Source: Epiperipatus broadwayi
Lineage: Eukaryota > Animalia > Onychophora
DNA length: 64,000 bases
Assembly: GCA_028023455.1 (NCBI GenBank)
Contig: JAQFVV010000011.1
Span: forward strand, 310,001-374,000
Direction of reading: 5' to 3'
The stretch's first letter is position 1. The number at the start of each line of letters is the position of its first letter. Both the position numbers and the translations under genes were made by a program. The notes under the pieces are model-generated. The model had not been told where the DNA came from, did no database searches, and was given only the letters and a program-made list of their open reading frames with translations. Of this stretch, positions 12,521 to 62,601 are shown in pieces.

Positions 12521-12924
12521 AAAACAGGCAAAACTCTCCATACAGTAGTCAAGTGTTGTTAGTGGAGAGGTCAGTGCAGCTGCCTTGCAAGCAAGCAGTT
12601 GGTTGCAGATGGTTGTTGCAGGTTCGCCTCCCAGCAGAAAAAAAACTCTCCATACAGGAGTGCCATTCAGTGCCAACCACAGTAATCAATGGATGCCAGA
12701 AAGCTTGTGCATAAAATCCCTATCTAGTGCCTATTCATCCAATATCTTCTAGTCTGGGGATATTGGATGAGTAGGCACTAGATAGGGATTTTATGGACAA
12801 ACCTTCTGGCATCCATTTATTACTGTGGTTGGTATTGAGTGGCATTATTATATGGAGAGTTTTGCCTGTTTTAATAACAGTAATGTGCTAGCATAAGAAA
12901 TAGTGATCATGTGATGTTTAGTGG
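12521..12924. mobile_element. Family A palindromic insertion lacking the HHR core
   Basis: An inverted arm ending atccaatatc is joined (~12746-12750) to ctagtctggggatattgg. 16-bp TSD tttaactttttatctt at 12505-12520 and 12925-12940. Confidence 0.9.
12546..12641 (+). mobile_element. tRNA-Gly-derived SINE (family C, TGC subtype) nested in family A
   Basis: tRNA-like body with an A-tail and a 16-bp TSD aaaactctccatacag at 12530-12545 and 12642-12657. Confidence 0.8.
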
Positions 12925-15509: not shown

Positions 15510-16046
15510 GTTATGCTGAAGGCTTGTGATGATGGTATTTTAGTTGTATTTATATATTGGATTATTTCCAAATGTAATATTAAATATTAAATGTCTTTAG
15601 AAAAAAATTAACTTTATTTAATTTTTCTAATTATGTTTAACTGCTAGTAACAGCACAAAGGTTAGTATATGCACAAAGTTTTGAGAGATATTATTCTCCT
15701 CTCTTCTTTAGTTGTTGCTTATCTAATCAATGACCAGGTCTGATTCCCATGCTGGTACACTGGTCAGGCCAGCACCACCTGAAGAAGAAAAGAGAATAAT
15801 ACCTCTCAAAATGGTGTGCATTTTTACTAACCTGTGTGCTATTACTAACAGTTGAATGTCACTGGTCAGGCTATCAACACCTGAAGAAGAGAGGAGAATA
15901 ATATCTTTCGAAATGTTGTGCATATACTATCCTGTTTGCTATTATTAACAGTTGAATATAATTGGAAAATTTAAATAAAGTTGAATTTGTCTAAAGACAT
16001 TCACTACTTAATATTAGATGATGGAAATAGTCCAATATATAAATAC
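15510..16046. mobile_element. Family E (PLE terminal repeat) inverted pair with tandem HHRs
   Basis: 15510-15720 is the antisense of E. 15731-16046 is sense E with a B-box remnant and two HHR units 102 nt apart. It is homologous to 22386-22600, and a weak 6-bp TSD (aagtag) is present. Confidence 0.85.
15878..15920 (+). ncRNA. Minimal hammerhead ribozyme, family E (PLE type)
   Basis: cac CTGAAGA a GAGAG gagaataatat CTTTC GAAA tg TT | gtg. The copy consensus is GAAACGTT (palindrome AACGTT), which has been eroded by CpG-type changes. Confidence 0.65.
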
Positions 16047-21415: not shown

Positions 21416-22576
21416 TCAGATATTAAAACAGGTTTTATATTTAGAGGTTGTTTATACTAAAGCTTGGCTTTGATCCTCTGAATGTTGAAGTGGTGATTAT
21501 TATCATTTATTCTCTCTCTATATATATATATTCAGTAGATTAAATTTACTCCCTCATTTAAAATTACATAAATAAACTAAACATATGTAAGAACAAATGC
21601 TAAAGGACAAGTAGTATCATCCATTTTTTGGAGAGTTTATTTATATTATGTAGCCCATTGGAAGCTATATTTGTGTTTAATAAAATAATTTTAGTAGCAC
21701 TGAACCTGTAATCAATAGACAAATTAAAAATATAAAAAGAAATAAGGTGCTATTAAGATTTCTGTTGTAAAATATGGATTGTATTACGTTAGAGATTACT
21801 GGTAAAAGTGAAAACTACTCATTTGGAGATATATAAATTCCAGAATTGAGCACACCAATTCAACTGATTAGCTATGTCTAATGTTAAAACTATGATCTAG
21901 TCAAAGAAAATGATAAATGTAAGAAATAAAATGACTAGCTATTGTACAACTCTACATAATAATTTTAGATGACTTATGGTTTTTAGATATAGCGATAAAC
22001 ATGATGGCATAGGTATTGCTTTGGATATAAGAACTGAAGACAGTTTTTAAAGTAACACATAAATGATAGCTTGATGAAAGTTAGATTTAAAGGAATGTAC
22101 TCATGATGTCAAATAGTGATGATGATCTGGAGATAGAAATTGTTCAAGACCAGTTCTCTTCACCTATTCTTGAAGCACTTACTATAAGTCTGATTAACGT
22201 ATGGATACCAAATGATATAATGCTTCAATATTATCATCCCCAGACATGTTTTAGTATGAGGACTAGAATTCAAAGCTGGAACTAATGCCCTTATGCATTG
22301 AGAGCCATTTTCTTTACACTATACTGTTCAATCTAATCCTGAAAACTTTTTTCCTGTGCAATTATGTAAATCTGATACAAGGTTATTTTTGTATTGGACT
22401 ATTTCCATCATTTAATATGAGTATTGAATGTCTTTAGAAAAAAAATAACTTTATTTAAATATTTCAAATACATTCAACAGTAGTAATAGCACATTAAACA
22501 GGTTAGTATATGCCCAATGTTTTGAGAGATATTATTCTCCCCTCTTCAAATGTTGCTGGCCTGACCAGTGACAGTA

Positions 22577-22660
22577 CTAGCATGGGATTCAAACCTGGAC
22601 CCTTAGATTCTTGAGTATTGAATTTTAAAGTAATGCTCTAACCAACTGAGCCATCCTGCC
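22577..22660 (-). promoter_or_regulatory. tRNA-like Pol III internal promoter module inside the PLE 3' repeat
   Basis: A box TGGCTCAGTTGG (22653-22642) and B box GGTTTGAATCC (22595-22585). The B-box half is also linked to the HHR in the independent copy at ~15731. Confidence 0.65.
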
Positions 22661-22739
22661 AAAGGCAACAGTCAATAGAAATTTTATATCTATGAGGTTC
22701 TTTCTGATTTCTCCACTTTTTCCTAAGAGCAAAGTTGTT

Positions 22740-23442
22740 TAGTAGTTTCCATACATTATGTATAGGCACACTAGGTTGGCTTGTGGGATTTTTTGCCATT
22801 GGTATGTGAGCAGCTTCTTTAAATTATCTTTTTTGTACCTTTTCTTCTCTATCCAATATTTTTGTATTTTCCCAATTACACATATGTTCATTGGCACATA
22901 CATTGTCTGCTACCTTAGACATATCTGTTTTCCCTCTTCTAATCATCAGTTTGTGTTCTTGCAAGCACTTTTCAATGGGGTGACTGGTCTCACCAATATA
23001 TTTTCTTCCACATCCACATAGTATTTCATAGATGCAGTTTTTTTCTTTTAAGCATTTCAAGTTTAGGCTTGTAGATGTTATAATTCCTCATAGTCAGGTA
23101 TGGTTCTGGAAAGCTGTTCTGAGGTTGTACTGATTTGCAGATTTTCCTTAATTTGTCTATTTTTGGAATGTATGGGTTCACTACAGTACCAATAATTGTC
23201 TTTTCTTTTGATAGTTCTTTTTGTCATCTATTTAACATTTTCTTAATAACAGCTGATGGATAACATCTTTCATAAAAGTTTGCCCCCCCCCTCAAATTGA
23301 ATGTTTCTGAACAAACTTCTTTTGCTCTGTTCCATAATGATAGTATAACTCCATGTTTTGTGTTTCTGGTGTGATTGGATGTATAGGCTAGGTATTTTCC
23401 TGTATGTGTAGGTTTTTGATAAACTGTAGTTTTAATTTTCAC
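22740..23442 (-). pseudogene. PLE RT thumb plus GIY-YIG endonuclease remnant (frameshifted)
   Basis: TTVYQKPTHTGKYLAYTSNH..K..VILSLWNRAKEVCS, CYPSAVIKK, and CIYEILCGCGRKYIGETSHPIEKCLQEH..WENTKILDRE, typical of Poseidon-like PLE ORFs. Confidence 0.9.
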
Positions 23443-23749
23443 AAACCTTCAGGAAAACATTGATACAAGGTTAGTTTTTTTTTTCATTTTAGGACCTTCA
23501 GGTTCATCAAACAAGTTAGCTTGGATTCAAAGTATTAGAATTTTTATTTAAAATTTCTAGTTATTAGCTTGAATGATATAAGGAAATAAAAGATAGCTCC
23601 TAGATGTTTAAGTGCATTACTTCCAGCAGTGAATTTTAGTTCTAATGAAAACAAAAGCCAGAAGTCAATCTGGGAATAGGAATATTATAGTATTATAGCA
23701 TCTGATGTCCATTGATTATACAAATGGTGGAATAGGGTGAGGAAAGTTG

Positions 23750-41447: not shown

Positions 41448-41544
41448 TGTTAATTGTTGGTGACCTAGTGGTTAGCATAGCTGCCTTCCAAGCAGCTGGC
41501 CGGGGTTCGCTTCCCAGTCAACACATTTGACATATGAAGAAAAA
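41448..41544 (+). mobile_element. tRNA-Gly(TCC)-derived SINE or retrocopy (family C)
   Basis: Intact anticodon arm gctgc ct TCC aa gcagc (41480-41496), tail tttgacatatg-polyA, and an imperfect 16-bp TSD. Confidence 0.8.
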
Positions 41545-41669
41545 AATTATAGTAAAACTCATTTATCTTACTCAACTTGCCTTCAAGCTATTTCCAATTT
41601 TTTGTTTTATTTAAAAATTGTGCAGGAAACACGAATTATTTATTTAAATTTTAATTAAATATCTAATTT

Positions 41670-47140: not shown

Positions 47141-47635
47141 AAACCTTTATGTGACAGATCCAGCCATTTAATGCCTGTCATGCATTTAAAAGGTTCTCAC
47201 ATTCATTCATCAAGTTTTTAACTTCATATCTGTGGATAATATTATGGATGATTCGTTGAGAAAATTTATTTCAAAGCTTCTTGTAGCTTTAACATTTCAA
47301 AACTAATTTTTTTTCTTTGATCTCTATTTTGTTCATCTGCTTTTTTGCAAGCATATTAACTTTCTATTTATTATTAAAGGATTATTAAACAAAATATTTT
47401 ATCCACAAGAACCAGACTTACATATCAGGAAGAGTAAATAGAAACAATAATTTTGCAATTATATTTATACATATACAAATGTTAATACTAATTATTTTAA
47501 TGAGCACATAAATAATTTTACAGTTTATCAAATATGTAGCACTATGAATATAAATGTATTTCATGGAACAAATATATGACAAAAGAGATTGGCATTGATG
47601 TAATAAAATACACATTATTTATAAGTTTATTTAAA

Positions 47636-47986
47636 TATAGAGGGTTTGAACTCAGACTTTTAAGCACCCTTCAACTATCCACACTATCTCATATCACTAA
47701 TACACATGACCACACACATGTAAAAAATATAAATAATTACCAATATATGCATTTCGTGCTGAACCAGCACTCATCAGTTGGCCCTCATCATCATCTCCCA
47801 CACACATATAATCAGTGCTCAATTTATATTAAGATAGCAAATACTCATACTTTAATGGACAGGTTTCACTCAACTCCAATCCCCAACTCTTCAGCCATCC
47901 ATACTATTGAAAATCTGATGATGGACAGCCCAAGCCCAAATCCCAGGTTGATACCAATCTTATTGTTATGTCTGTATTTCAAATAT
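47636..47986 (-). mobile_element. Family B HHR element
   Basis: 14-bp TSD taagtttatttaaa (47622-47635, 47987-48000) around an element with an intact HHR. Confidence 0.9.
47740..47781 (-). ncRNA. Minimal type I hammerhead ribozyme, family B (all core nucleotides intact)
   Basis: CCAA CTGATGA GTGCTG gtt CAGCAC GAAA T gcat A TA | TTGG, with a 4-bp stem I, 6-bp stem II and 2-bp stem III. Confidence 0.88.
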
Positions 47987-49479
47987 TAAGTTTATTTAAA
48001 ATGATTCTTTGGGGATCTTGCTTGTAAATTGTCTTAGTAACATATCTTAATTGTTCCATGAAATAGATATATACAAATTAAGTATCTATAAGTCTGTTAA
48101 TAATAAAAATTTAATTGTTAGTGAGAATAAAGAGTTTATTTTTTTTAACATTTAAGTCATTAATTTATAAATTGATTTATAAGAATAGCTATTTATTGGG
48201 TGATATGAAAGTGGATTTGTCTTAAATTCATTATTAAATAATACAAAAGAGTCAATTGATAGCAAATCTATTCCTAGTTTGGTTTTTAAGATTTCTTGCA
48301 GTTGTCATAAAAGTTATATAGGTCAAAGTAAATTAAGTCTTAATGAAAGAGTTAAAGTTCATAAGACTAGAGCTAAAATTGATATCATAATTCAACTTTG
48401 TATATTCATGTTGTGAATAAAAGTCATATAATATTATTTGTCAATGCAAAAATTATCTTATAGGATAGAAACAAATTAAAAAGACTATTTTATTTTGTAT
48501 ATATATGTTGTGTGTAATTTGTTGAATTTCATTTAAAAAGCTTTATTTGTTAATAGATGAAACCATGGTTGTGGAGAAATTTTAACAATTTTTTTTTTTT
48601 TTGCCTAATGTTAGATGATTTTCTATTTTATATATACAAATGTATACATTTATAGGCATTTCTTGTTATATTTCTTTATACTTAATTTTTAATCAGTCTT
48701 TTGAGAAAATTTATATTATTAAAATCATCATTATCAAACAGATCCATAACAGTTCATTATATTTATACAAGAATCAACAATATTTGAATTTTTTTATATG
48801 TAACAGATAATACGCTATTATTAATGTCAAAACAATTAATAATTATTCCTTATTTTTATTTCTTGTTTTTGCTATATGCATTTTTTAATATGGTGCACTA
48901 TAATCATGGACATTACCTATAATAAATGTTTTAATTAATTTTGGTGTATCACACTAAAGATGCATCCACTTTAAAGTGATCAAATAAAAAATATCTACAG
49001 TAAGGAATCATTATTTTGCTATTTTTCATTAATCCTTTATTCTTAAATATGCATGCTTGCACATATCCATGATAGAAATATATATGTAAGATAAAACTGG
49101 CAGACATTTTGAAAAACTATTGCAAGAATATTTTTAAAAAATTTCTAGTAGGAGAGGTAAATTTTTAAAAAAATGGCAGTGATATGATTTCTATATATAT
49201 ATATGAGATCATGAAGTATGTTGAAGAAGTCTATGAAAAACTATATAATAATAAAGAAGAAGAAACAGTAGCTCCTACAATTATGATGATATTTTTTAAT
49301 ATATAGCCCATACAATTACAACATCTTTTGAAATGCCAACTATTATATTTTAAACGAAGAGGTGAAACATAAGTCTATAAAAAATGAAAACCAAAAGTGA
49401 TGGAATATTTACAGATATTTAAAAAAAAGTTGGTGAAGAAATAGTTGGTAAATATATTTATCAAATATCTAAGAAGATA

Positions 49480-50139
49480 AAATATAGGGGATTTGAACAC
49501 AAACTTTCAAGCACCCTTCAAGTATCCACACTCTCATACCACTGAAACACATGACCACACACATGTAGGAAAGATAAATAATCACCAATATACATATTTC
49601 ATGCTGAACCAGCACTCATCAGTTGGTCCAGATTATCATCTCCCACACACACACATATATAATCAGTGCTCAGTTTATATTAAGACAGCAAATCTTCATA
49701 TCTTAATAAACAGAATTCATTCTACTCCAACCTCCAACACTTCAGCTGTCCATACCATTGAAAATCTGATGATGGAAAACCCAAATCTCATACTGGTGCC
49801 AATATTATTGCCATGCCATATTGGCACCAGTACGGGATTTGGGATTTCCATCATCAGATTTTCAATGGTATGGATGGCTGAAATGTTGGAGGTTGGAGTA
49901 GATTGAAGCCTGTCCATTAAGGTATGAAGATTTGATGTCTTAATATAAACTGAGCACTGATCATATATATGTGTGAGATGATAATCTGGATCAACTAATG
50001 AGGGCTGGTTTAGCATGAAATACATTTATTGATGATTATTTATCTTTTCTACATGTGTGTGTTCATGTGTTTCAGTGGTATGAGATAGTGTGGATATTTG
50101 AAAGTTTCTTGAAAGTTTGTGTTCGAATCCCCTATATTT
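49480..50139. mobile_element. Family B palindrome, 660 bp
   Basis: Arms 49480-49805 and 49818-50139 around a 12-nt loop. The ORF track shows homologous peptides on opposite strands. Confidence 0.92.
49585..49626 (-). ncRNA. Minimal hammerhead ribozyme, family B
   Basis: CCAA CTGATGA GTGCTG gtt CAGCAT GAAA T atgt A TA | TTGG. Confidence 0.8.
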
Positions 50140-51521
50140 ACAATTAAGTTCCAGATATATGAAGAATGTCTGTATTTGAAGATATATTAAATGAATAGAA
50201 GAATGCAATTCTATGCAAGATTCTAAAATCACTACATCTCACCTGTAGAGTGCTTTGGACTCAAACCGATTAAAACAACAAGTGGCACTTAACAGTGGCT
50301 ATAGCTCAGTAGACCATATTTAAGTACTATGAGAAGTGATAAAATAAACAATGAGCAGTTGCTATTTTGCTTTGAACTTATAAATTATGAAAAGGCATTT
50401 GGCTTTATAAGTATTTCAATAAGGATTAAGGCTCTGAAACCTCAAAGCATAGATTCAGGATAATCTAAAGAATATTTATGAAAATACTGCAGCAGTGATT
50501 AGACTTTGTGATGACACTGTGGAAATTAACATTGGTAAGGATATATGACACCGATTTCAGTTTTCTAAAACTTTTTACAGCAGTTTTCCAAGATGTATTT
50601 TGTAAATTTTAAAAGGAAAAACTAAGAAAATAAAAATAAATGGAAATTAATTATGTCTATCAACAAATGAAGTAATTGTTTCATAAATAATGTTTTACAG
50701 CTTCCTGAAATATTACAGAGCTATCAAATGATGTTAAAAAAAAAGACTGAAGATAAATACTAAAAAAATAAAAACAATGTTTTATGGCTTCCAAAGAGTA
50801 TGAAAATAAAGATTGGTAATACTGAAACAATAGTTATTAATTATAAATACATTGGTTAGGCTGAAACATAATGAATAAAATTGGTGATAGAATTGAACTT
50901 GCATAGAATGGTTTTGTTAGAAATAAGATATTAAAAGAGAATATGCCCATGTTCTTAGAAAAAATGGGATTTTTTTTTATTAAATGTGTTTATCAATGCT
51001 TACTTATAGATCTGACACTCAGATACTTAATTGAAGAGCAATGGACAAATTTCAGAGGACATGATTTATACCGGATTAGTAAGGAGAAATAAAAAACAAA
51101 ATATATGAGTAAGACATTCCCAAAAAAAATGAAGATACTAAAATAGAATTGTGCTAGAAATATAGGTATTTAACTAAAAATCTTAAATTGGATTCCAAAA
51201 GATTGTAAAACATTAAAAAAAGATATCACTGTAAAATAAGTGAATGGGATAACAAAGCTTATGAAAAATAATGTAGAGAATAAAGTTATGGATTGAAGAC
51301 ACTGGATTAAATTTGAAGACACCATGCTAAAATGGTTTAATAATAGTTGAAAATGATGGCCTAATTGATCAGAGCATCATCTTAAATACGGCATTCATGA
51401 ATCTGACAACCACTAGTGCAATTCCCATGCTAGCTGTTACTGGATAGGCCAGAAATACCTGAAAAAGAAATTGGAATAGTATCACTTGAAATGCCATGTT
51501 TATACTAACTAGTGTGTTATT

Positions 51522-60699: not shown

Positions 60700-60875
60700 T
60701 TCTGATGGTTTTCTGAAGGTTTGTGATGATGGAATTTTAGTTGTATTTATATATTGGACTATTTCCACCATCTAATATAAGTATTGAATGTCTTTAGAAA
60801 AATTTAACTTGCTTTATTGAGTATTCAATACTTATATTAGATTATGGAAATAGTCCAATATATAAATATACTAAT
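60700..60875. mobile_element. Fold-back of the family E tail
   Basis: tatttatatattggactatttcc..tctaatataagtattgaat and attcaatacttatattaga..ggaaatagtccaatatataaata form an inverted pair. Confidence 0.8.
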
Positions 60876-62508: not shown

Positions 62509-62601
62509 TCAATGCATTGTTAGCCTAGTGGCTAGCATAGCTGCCTTCCAAGCAGCTGGCCTGGGTTCACTTCCTGGTCAACGCATTTGACATATGAAAA
62601 A
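62509..62601 (+). mobile_element. tRNA-Gly(TCC)-derived SINE or retrocopy (family C)
   Basis: TCC anticodon arm, tail tttgacatatg-polyA, and a 13-bp TSD aaaatgggactag (62496-62508, 62602-62614). Confidence 0.88.

What the first reader, a model, noticed from the sequence alone, without database searches (positions are those of the whole stretch)
22386..23460. Penelope-like element with a tRNA-like Pol III module directly upstream of its hammerhead
Seen in sequence: on the minus strand the GIY-YIG reading frame runs into ggcaggaTGGCTCAGTTGGttagagc...ccaGGTTTGAATCCcatgc, then after ~30 nt into the family E HHR and tail, all inside one 13-bp TSD. The B-box half is attached to the HHR in the separate copy at 15731, so the module belongs to the family rather than being a one-off insertion. 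Established: PLE terminal repeats carry HHRs, and schistosome SM-alpha repeats combine Pol III boxes with an HHR. Inference: this is a PLE whose terminal repeat is itself a SINE-like Pol III unit, a possible direct link between PLEs and ribozyme-bearing SINEs/retrozymes. I do not recall this being described.
Basis: partly seen in the sequence, partly recalled or inferred. Interest (0 to 1): 0.85.

Follow-up and report, generated by a model that had tools for sequence, protein, structure and literature searches.

The report
Penelope retroelement with built-in tRNA-like block
This is a dead, shortened copy of a very abundant Penelope-like jumping gene whose tail end carries a tRNA-derived promoter-like block just ahead of its small hammerhead motif; the same layout turns up in two unrelated relatives and I found no paper describing it.

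Summary
On the minus strand, 23460..22386 is a 1,075-nt, 5'-truncated, decayed Penelope-like element (PLE) between 13-bp target-site duplications. It reads: RT-thumb and GIY-YIG remnants, an 83-nt tRNA-derived block (22660..22578; A box perfect, B box 10/11; no cloverleaf), about 25 nt of spacer, a hammerhead-type motif, and a 127-nt tail.

The block is not a one-off. Contigs about 15% diverged from this copy bridge ORF end, tRNA block and hammerhead in data from three organisms. The family is very abundant (about 82,000 laid contigs in one run).

Two distant PLE relatives from environmental assemblies (L022, L025) carry different tRNA-like blocks in the same slot, between the ORF stop and a canonical minimal hammerhead. 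Four other relatives have none.

Two corrections. The family's "hammerhead" is non-canonical: A replaces G12 in 3 of 4 window copies, and this copy is also mutated at C3 and stem I. Pol III use is unproven: I saw no pile-up of 5' ends at the tRNA start, and a T8 run lies about 50 nt before the 3' end.

I found no paper describing it. I rate it a new variant of a known kind.

The parts
23461..23473 (-). Upstream target-site duplication, TAACCTTGTATCA
   Evidence: exact 13-bp repeat of 22373-22385, directly abutting the element's ends.
23439..23460 (+). Probable inverted fragment (about 20 nt) of the family's optional 3' tail extension, at the 5' junction
   Evidence: 17 of 20 matches to the extension seen on the left arm at about 15519-15548. 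15 of 3,000 random window pieces score as well, and these include true family copies. It also matches the loose-end consensus.
23029..23438 (-). Remnant of the RT C-terminal (thumb/linker) region, with stops and frame shifts
   Evidence: VYQKPTHTGKYL...; tblastn to residues of about 550-710 of full-length PLE proteins that carry RVT_1.
22641..23087 (-). GIY-YIG endonuclease remnant and ORF C-terminus. One internal stop; the frame runs into the tRNA-like block.
   Evidence: PF01541, E=0.001; 861 phmmer hits; homology ends near 22695.
22578..22660 (-). tRNA-derived block: intact D-arm, A box at 22653..22642, B box at 22595..22585, an apparent ~14-nt tandem duplication in the anticodon-arm region (read by eye, not tested), and no cloverleaf
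   Evidence: Rfam tRNA 13.9 bits; ARAGORN finds nothing, even after trial deletions. Family-wide.
22513..22552 (-). Hammerhead-derived motif of the minimal PLE type, decayed here: stem I CAU/GGG, core UUGAAGA, extra G, stem II GGGAGA/UCUCUC, then AAAA-CA-UU
   Evidence: same architecture as the canonical minimal hammerheads of L002, L003, L021, L022 and L025; most copies read CAC-CUGAAGA and GUG; no Rfam hammerhead match.
22386..22512 (-). 3' tail, with the clade-conserved end motif GATGGAAATAGTCCAATA and a T8 run at 22445..22438
   Evidence: The tail motif recurs in L002, L021, L022 and L025.
22373..22385 (-). Downstream target-site duplication
15519..15706 (-). Second family insertion, inverted left arm: hammerhead motif, tail and the ~30-nt tail extension
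15734..16043 (+). Second family insertion, right arm: B-box half of the tRNA block, then two tandem ~102-nt hammerhead units, then the tail. The unit at 15881 is the only window copy with CUGAAGA...GAAA.

Best explanation
**What it is.** This is an old, 5'-truncated, inactivated insertion of a very abundant endonuclease-bearing Penelope-like element family.

**Shown.**
- The family's 3' untranslated region contains a tRNA-derived block as a fixed feature. The block keeps the Pol III A and B boxes but not the tRNA fold.
- The block sits between the ORF end and a hammerhead-derived motif, and a tail recognised by the element's reverse transcriptase follows.
- The insertion footprint is the ordinary PLE one: a target duplication, 5' truncation, a short inverted piece of the tail extension at the 5' junction, and an optional ~30-nt tail extension that this copy lacks.

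**Inferred.**
- The block entered an ancestor by template switching between a tRNA or tRNA-headed, hammerhead-tailed SINE RNA and the PLE RNA.
- It is kept because it acts as an internal Pol III promoter. Each insertion that retains about the last 280 nt could then be transcribed on its own as a SINE-like RNA (tRNA head, hammerhead unit, tail) and copied in trans by the PLE protein.

I put about 0.9 on the structural part and about 0.45 on the Pol III/SINE function.
For: **Structure of this copy:**

**Family-wide:**,683 contigs were laid in X1. Flank depth is about 0 against 10^5-10^6 inside the element. Listed records 3, 4, 10, 11, 12, 17 and 28 bridge 22660 with more than 31 nt on each side at 13-17% difference, in organisms A, B and C. 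The apparent breaks at 22689, 22543 and 22478 are small indels, because the loose-end consensus continues the same sequence.

**Boxes kept while the rest decays:** the A box is perfect and the B box 10/11 in a copy whose ORF is riddled with stops and whose hammerhead core is mutated. The cloverleaf is lost.

**Recurrence:** L022 has a tRNA-like block 30 nt after the stop (ARAGORN calls an 85-nt tRNA; Rfam tRNA 15 bits), followed by a canonical minimal hammerhead. L025 has A and B boxes at +14 and +57 after the stop, then a hammerhead at +190 (Rfam Hammerhead_1, 12.3 bits). All three blocks are in sense orientation. They are dissimilar to each other, while hammerhead plus tail is 75-82% conserved.

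**Depth:** the tRNA and tail bins run about 2-3 times above the ORF bins.

**Other notes:** first-reader notes and one follow-up report describe the same slot being used elsewhere in this genome. These are leads only.
Against: - No transcript 5' ends were examined.
- No pile-up of copy starts at 22660 appears among the best-supported loose ends in any of the four runs, whereas the 3' end gives 340-359.
- A T7-T8 run, a Pol III terminator, lies about 50 nt upstream of the 3' end motif in 2 of 3 window copies. A Pol III transcript from those copies would lack the RT-recognition end.
- Relatives L002, L003, L021 and L026 lack any tRNA block.
- The ORF-to-hammerhead spacer varies in length and sequence, so it may simply tolerate insertions.
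- Summed contig word depth is a poor measure of copy number, and tRNA words are shared with other repeats.
Confidence: 0.5

Rival explanations
1. Neutral passenger. The spacer between the ORF stop and the hammerhead is the one place in a compact PLE where extra sequence is tolerated. A tRNA or SINE head was captured there once in this family's ancestor, and independently in others, and was simply inherited during amplification with no role.
For: The spacer differs in length and sequence in every relative, from 0 to about 200 nt. Four of six relatives have no block. There is no 5'-end pile-up at the tRNA start. An internal T7-T8 run is present. tRNA-derived SINEs are abundant in this genome and so are available as donors.
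Against: Three of three blocks are in sense orientation. All are trimmed to just the promoter-bearing, tRNA-sized part, with no SINE body or poly(A). A and B boxes stay near consensus while the tRNA stems are lost. Different tRNA heads occupy the same slot in three lineages, and reportedly in several families of this genome.
Confidence: 0.33
2. A functional tRNA-like element that is not a SINE promoter. It could be an RNase P/Z processing site that separates ORF mRNA from the downstream hammerhead-tail RNA, or a TFIIIC-bound site that shields the element from silencing.
For: The position exactly at the ORF/terminal-unit boundary fits this. ARAGORN still folds the L022 block as a tRNA. This role would tolerate the internal T-run.
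Against: The block here and in L025 has no cloverleaf. The T-stem and acceptor stem are broken, and the fold has z=+0.57 against shuffles. RNase P and Z need that fold.
Confidence: 0.1
3. A one-off event at this locus: either a chimeric insertion made by a template switch from a SINE RNA to a PLE mRNA, or a SINE nested later into this copy.
For: A single TSD encloses everything. The second window copy starts inside the block, so on its own it could be a truncated SINE.
Against: Many diverged contigs from three organisms carry the same ORF/tRNA junction. No TSD or tail bounds the block. The only flanking match is ACTGT, 5 nt, and there is no significant local similarity.
Confidence: 0.02

Closest known systems
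Endonuclease-bearing Penelope-like elements with minimal type I hammerheads in their pseudo-LTRs (Cervera & de la Pena 2014, PMC4209133; Craig et al. 2021, PMC8557442; Frangieh et al. 2024, PMC11167929)
   Same: RT plus C-terminal GIY-YIG; a hammerhead-type motif near the 3' end with an extra nucleotide before a G10.1-C11.1 stem II and no helix III; variable TSD; 5' truncation; inverted truncated partner; an optional 30-40-nt tail present at one end only.
   Different: None of these papers mentions a tRNA-derived block between the ORF stop and the hammerhead (the only 'tRNA' mention, in PMC8557442, concerns selenocysteine recoding). In this family the hammerhead lacks G12 in most copies seen.
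Sm-alpha / Sj-alpha of schistosomes: tRNA-derived SINE-like repeats carrying a type I hammerhead (Ferbeyre 1998, as cited in PMC2770079 and PMC8490949)
   Same: A tRNA-derived Pol III-type head joined to a hammerhead in a short, highly repeated unit.
   Different: Sm-alpha is non-coding, with a canonical active hammerhead and no demonstrated autonomous partner. Here the same two modules sit inside the 3' end of an ORF-bearing element.
Animal non-LTR retrozymes (Cervera & de la Pena 2020, PMC7229834; Li et al. 2026 preprint, 10.64898/2026.07.22.740005)
   Same: Tandem hammerhead units proposed to be non-autonomous derivatives of PLE pseudo-LTRs. A ~102-nt tandem unit is present at 15760-15960.
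   Different: Retrozymes as described have no tRNA head ('tRNA' is absent from the preprint and used only for ligases in the 2020 paper). Circular RNA was not examined here.
TRIMp3: Cassandra, Helenus and Ajax, non-autonomous LTR elements with 5S- or tRNA-derived Pol III promoters in their LTRs (Kojima 2024, PMC10886601)
   Same: The promoter part of a small-RNA gene is built into a retroelement's terminal repeat. The boxes are conserved and the RNA fold is lost, and multiple independent origins are inferred.
   Different: Those are LTR-class and non-autonomous, and Kojima argues their autonomous partners must use Pol II. Here the block is in a PLE-class, ORF-bearing element.

Membership tests
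Penelope-like element (EN+) | Reverse transcriptase of PLE type | tested here: inconclusive
   Only the C-terminal part survives the 5' truncation. It aligns to residues of about 550-710 of full-length proteins that carry RVT_1 and HTH_animal. The catalytic motifs are absent from this copy.
Penelope-like element (EN+) | C-terminal GIY-YIG endonuclease | tested here: met
   PF01541 at E=0.001 (19.7 bits, below the 22.6 cut-off). GIY-YIG-type motif ...IYEI..CG..YIGET present. 861 phmmer hits, and tblastn to PLE C-termini.
Penelope-like element (EN+) | Insertion footprint: TSD, 5' truncation, inverted truncated partner, optional 30-40-nt tail at one end | tested here: met
   13-bp TSD; truncation inside the RT; ~20-nt inverted tail-extension piece; the extension is present on the left arm at 15.5 kb and in other copies but absent here.
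Hammerhead ribozyme (minimal type I, PLE type) | Core box C3-U4-G5-A6-N7-G8-A9 | tested here: inconclusive
   This copy reads UUGAAGA. Two of four window copies read CUGAAGA, and most laid copies read C at that place.
Hammerhead ribozyme (minimal type I, PLE type) | Core box G12-A13-A14 followed by A15.1 | tested here: not met
   AAAA in 3 of 4 window copies, this one included. Only the unit at 15881 has GAAA. No majority difference was listed at 22523.
Hammerhead ribozyme (minimal type I, PLE type) | Stem II with G10.1-C11.1 preceded by an extra nucleotide; stem I flanking the core | tested here: met
   G + GGGAGA/UCUCUC here. Stem I is CAC/GUG in other copies and in most laid contigs, but broken here. 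The layout matches L002, L003, L021, L022 and L025.
Hammerhead ribozyme (minimal type I, PLE type) | Self-cleavage | not testable with these tools
   Needs transcription and cleavage assays of monomer and dimer constructs.
tRNA gene | Cloverleaf recognised by tRNA models | tested here: not met
   ARAGORN finds nothing, even after trial deletions. Rfam tRNA scores 13.9 bits against a gathering score of 29. Fold z=+0.57.
tRNA-derived SINE (SINE2 type) | Internal A and B boxes at workable spacing | tested here: met
   TGGCTCAGTTGG and GGTTTGAATCC, 46 nt apart.
tRNA-derived SINE (SINE2 type) | Copies that begin at the tRNA head's first base, flanked by their own TSD | tested here: inconclusive
   None in the window. 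No cluster at 22660 among the best-supported loose ends, but 4,177 were not shown and contigs break at repeats.
tRNA-derived SINE (SINE2 type) | Transcription by RNA polymerase III | not testable with these tools
   Only contigs of runs were available. An internal T8 run argues for caution.
Non-LTR retrozyme | Tandem hammerhead-bounded units expressed as circular RNA | tested here: inconclusive
   One two-unit tandem (period about 102 nt) at 15760-15960. Joints skipping 82-102 nt appear in other copies. Circles were not examined.

The most novel reading that the evidence does not exclude
Penelope-like elements in several animal lineages have repeatedly recruited different tRNA-derived Pol III promoters into the spacer between their ORF and hammerhead. 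Every insertion that keeps its last few hundred bases would then be a self-transcribing SINE master. This arrangement would be the origin of tRNA-headed hammerhead SINEs such as Sm-alpha, and of part of the animal retrozymes.
Probability: 0.35. Interest if true: 0.85.

Novelty: new variant of a known kind. Interest (0 to 1): 0.66.

Why it matters
How hammerhead-bearing short repeats (Sm-alpha, newt satellite 2, animal retrozymes) are transcribed, and which autonomous element moves them, has been argued mostly from co-occurrence with PLEs. An ORF-bearing PLE that carries the tRNA head and the hammerhead unit side by side, in three lineages with three different heads, would be the physical intermediate between the two. 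It would make the question directly testable with a Pol III assay, 5'-end mapping and a trans-mobilisation assay. It would also be the PLE counterpart of the Pol III-promoter LTR elements (Cassandra, Helenus), with the difference that here the promoter sits in the autonomous element itself.

Tried and rejected
- **Rfam at gathering and at E<=10 on both family copies:** no hammerhead family matched; tRNA matched only weakly.
- **ARAGORN on the block after every 8-21-nt trial deletion:** no call, so the parent tRNA is not established. The Phe-like look of the anticodon arm rests on my memory only.
- **The search for homologous proteins with the 87-aa GIY-YIG piece:** no candidate.
- **Exact-pattern scans of metagenome contigs for the tRNA+hammerhead and for the tail:** nothing.
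- **Viral contigs:** 16 hits to the 18-mer tail motif were only 21-25-nt matches, so chance.
- **An apparent match between the sequence upstream of the block and the end of the ~102-nt unit:** not significant.
- **A tRNA-like reading of the 3' end of the other hammerhead family, at about 47660 and 49520:** Rfam gave no support, so I dropped it.
- **A type III reading of the motif, using the GUC at 22571..22569:** rejected, because helix I would not close at the core.
- **The organism:** runs are coded and the window has no long ORF, so I could not name it.
Full report
**1. What is at the coordinates**

Read on the minus strand, the stretch 23460..22386 is bounded by an exact 13-bp direct repeat, TAACCTTGTATCA, at 23473..23461 and 22385..22373. 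Inside it lie, in order:

- The C-terminal part of a reverse transcriptase (…VYQKPTHTGKYL…).
- A GIY-YIG endonuclease (…IYEILCGCGRKYIGET…).

Both are broken by stops and frame shifts. The evidence for the endonuclease and the ORF is:

- Pfam GIY-YIG matches at E=0.001, 19.7 bits, below its 22.6-bit cut-off.
- phmmer against 1.84 billion representatives gives 861 hits. The best are 42-49% identical.
- tblastn with full-length hits that carry RVT_1 aligns 23442..22695 to their last ~280 residues.

So this is a 5'-truncated, dead copy of an endonuclease-bearing Penelope-like element (PLE). I did not assign it to a PLE clade.

**2. The tRNA-like block**

The block occupies 22660..22578.

- It has a perfect D-arm with the A box TGGCTCAGTTGG.
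- 46 nt further on is the B box GGTTTGAATCC, 10 of 11 to the consensus.
- Rfam's tRNA model aligns the D-arm and the B-box stretch of the T-arm but scores only 13.9 bits.
- ARAGORN calls nothing, even after trial deletions.
- The fold is no better than shuffled sequence.

The anticodon-arm region looks like a ~14-nt tandem duplication, read by eye and not tested. Its 3' part resembles tRNA-Phe as I remember it, which is a lead and not a test.

The ORF frame stays open into the block and stops in its D-loop. By homology, the ORF proper ends around 22700. The block is therefore tRNA-derived and keeps the Pol III promoter boxes, but not the tRNA structure.

**3. The 'hammerhead'**

About 25 nt downstream lies the motif CAU-UUGAAGA-G-GGGAGA-(loop)-UCUCUC-AAAA-CA-UU-GGG, at 22552..22513.

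No Rfam hammerhead model matches it. Its architecture nevertheless matches, position for position, the canonical minimal PLE hammerheads I recovered from relatives. L022, for example, reads CAC-CUGAAGA-U-GGCCGG…CCGACC-GAAA-CG-UC|GUG, and L025's motif is weakly aligned by Rfam Hammerhead_1. These motifs share three traits listed by Cervera and de la Pena (PMC4209133):

- an extra nucleotide before stem II;
- a G10.1-C11.1 pair;
- no helix III.

Most other copies of the family read CAC-CUGAAGA and GUG where this copy is mutated. However, three of the four window copies have A at the G12 position. Only the unit at 15881 has GAAA, and the 15.2-16.2 pair is not palindromic. I therefore call it a hammerhead-derived motif, probably weak or inactive in this family.

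**4. PLE footprint**

Other copies run about 30 nt past this copy's 3' end, with CAACTAAAA(C/U)ACCAUCAUCACAA…. The same extension sits on the inverted left arm of the second window insertion, at about 15548..15519.

This is the optional 30-40-nt 'tail' described for PLEs, which Frangieh et al. explain by two adjacent RT start sites (PMC8557442, PMC11167929).

The first ~20 nt of the present insertion (23458..23439, plus strand) match the end of that extension in inverted orientation. The match is 17 of 20, and about 0.5% of random window pieces do as well. That is the usual miniature inverted partner.

The insertion at 15.5-16.0 kb is an inverted arm plus a direct arm. The direct arm starts inside the B box and holds two tandem ~102-nt hammerhead units.

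**5. Is the block a family feature?**

Laying Logan contigs of four runs at 80% likeness or better gave the following.

- 82,683 contigs were laid in X1 alone.
- Depth is about zero in the flanks and 10^5-10^6 inside the element.
- Seven listed contigs (records 3, 4, 10, 11, 12, 17, 28) cross the ORF/tRNA junction at 22660 with more than 31 nt on each side. Each is 13-17% different from the window, so they come from other copies.
- These come from organism A (two runs of one sample), organism B, and an RNA-labelled run of organism C.
- The strongest 'loose ends' at 22689, 22543 and 22478 carry consensus letters that simply continue the element, so they are small indels and not breakpoints.

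This refutes a one-off chimera or a private nested SINE. No TSD, poly(A) or SINE body bounds the block.

Depth in the tRNA and tail bins is about 2-3 times that of the ORF bins. That fits extra ORF-less copies, but summed word depth is a weak measure. No cluster of copy starts at 22660 appears among the best-supported loose ends, whereas the 3' end gives 340-359.

**6. Relatives elsewhere**

I fetched the DNA around twelve phmmer hits.

*With a tRNA-like block in the same slot, in sense orientation:*

| Locus | Source | tRNA-like block | Hammerhead |
|---|---|---|---|
| L022 | Tara metagenome scaffold | Starts 30 nt after the stop. ARAGORN calls an 85-nt tRNA; Rfam tRNA 15 bits. | Canonical minimal hammerhead about 85 nt after the block |
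| L025 | 44-kb contig | A box at +14 and B box at +57 after the stop | Canonical hammerhead at +190. An inverted 76-nt truncated partner lies upstream. |

*With no such block:* L002, L003 (two copies), L021 and L026. All four have a minimal-type hammerhead core at this position (canonical GAAA-CG-U architecture read in L002, L003 and L021; L026 by core regex only), 0-160 nt after the stop.

*Not informative:* the other six either end too close to the ORF (L004, L023, L024, L027, L028) or showed no hammerhead or tRNA-like motif by eye (L001).

Hammerhead plus tail are 75-82% alike among L002, L021, L022 and L025. The three tRNA-like blocks are not alike at all. So different tRNA heads occupy the same slot in different lineages.

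One follow-up report called a tRNA-derived block in the terminal repeat 'the one unusual thing'. I treat these as leads, not as support.

**7. How it most likely works**

*Shown:* the anatomy, its fixation in the family, and its recurrence.

*Inferred origin:* a template switch between a tRNA or tRNA-headed SINE RNA and the PLE RNA. A switch landing downstream of the stop codon would leave the ORF intact.

*Inferred role (about 0.45):* an internal Pol III promoter. It would let the ~280-nt terminal unit be transcribed without the ORF and copied in trans, which is the standard SINE logic.

Points in favour:
- The boxes are kept while the stems decay.
- All blocks are in sense orientation.
- Only the promoter-bearing part was captured.
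- The slot has been used recurrently, with different heads.

Points against:
- No 5'-end pile-up at the tRNA start.
- A T7-T8 run lies about 50 nt before the conserved 3' end motif in 2 of 3 window copies. It would stop Pol III short of the RT-recognition end.
- Relatives without the block exist.

The main rival (about 0.33) is a neutral passenger in a permissive, hypervariable spacer. A processing or chromatin role (about 0.1) is weakened by the lost cloverleaf.

**8. Comparison with what is known**

Already described:
- PLE hammerheads.
- The PLE tail and insertion footprint.
- tRNA-derived hammerhead SINEs of schistosomes. Sm-alpha copies are called as tRNA-Gln by tRNAscan-SE (PMC2770079).
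- The proposed PLE origin of animal retrozymes (PMC7229834; preprint 10.64898/2026.07.22.740005).
- Pol III-promoter LTR elements (PMC10886601).

In seven full-text searches and eight of the nine papers read, I found no description of a tRNA-derived block inside a PLE. The library does not hold most subscription journals or Repbase Reports, so 'not described' is provisional.

**9. Verdict**

This locus is an ordinary dead copy. The interest lies in the family-level and cross-lineage architecture. I rate it a new variant of a known kind, interest 0.66.

Noticed in passing
window 62513-62600 (+), 41454-41550 (+), 56540-56470 (-): Short (~90 nt) tRNA-Gly(TCC)-derived SINE copies ending in poly(A). 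The copy at 62.5 kb has an 11-bp TSD, AATGGGACTAG. This is a LINE-type SINE family, distinct from the PLE-linked units.
   Followed up: partly
window 12547-12640 (+): Another tRNA-derived poly(A) SINE, with a 16-bp TSD AAAACTCTCCATACAG, nested in a different repeat that itself forms an inverted pair at 12640-12850.
   Followed up: no
window 47777 (-) and 49622 (-), elements at about 47600-47960 and 49460-49960: A second non-coding repeat family with a canonical type I minimal hammerhead: ACCAA-CUGAUGA-G-UGCUG…CAGCA-C-GAAA, a short loop, then UA|UUGGU. The copy at 49.5-49.96 kb has a long perfect hairpin at 49750-49890, which Rfam scores as miRNA-like. An inverted partner arm lies at 50050-50160.
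   Followed up: partly
window 60405 (+): A third hammerhead type with a palindromic helix III loop: CUGAUGA-U-GGCC…GGCC-A-GAAA-CUAG-UC|UGGGG.
   Followed up: no
window 60746-60866: A micro-insertion made only of two family tails head to head, 71 nt minus and 44 nt plus. This is an extreme case of the PLE inverted-pair footprint.
   Followed up: partly
window 48204-48380 (+): An isolated ~58-residue fragment of another PLE GIY-YIG region.
   Followed up: no
L002, L021, L022, L025 3' ends and window 22392-22409: A short end motif, roughly GA(U/G)GRWAAUAG(U/A)CCRA, is kept across PLEs that share only 42-49% protein identity. It is a candidate recognition or start site for the reverse transcriptase.
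   Followed up: partly
L021 4-118: A near-perfect hairpin at the start of that contig, which Rfam scores as miRNA-like. It is probably another PLE inverted pair.
   Followed up: no
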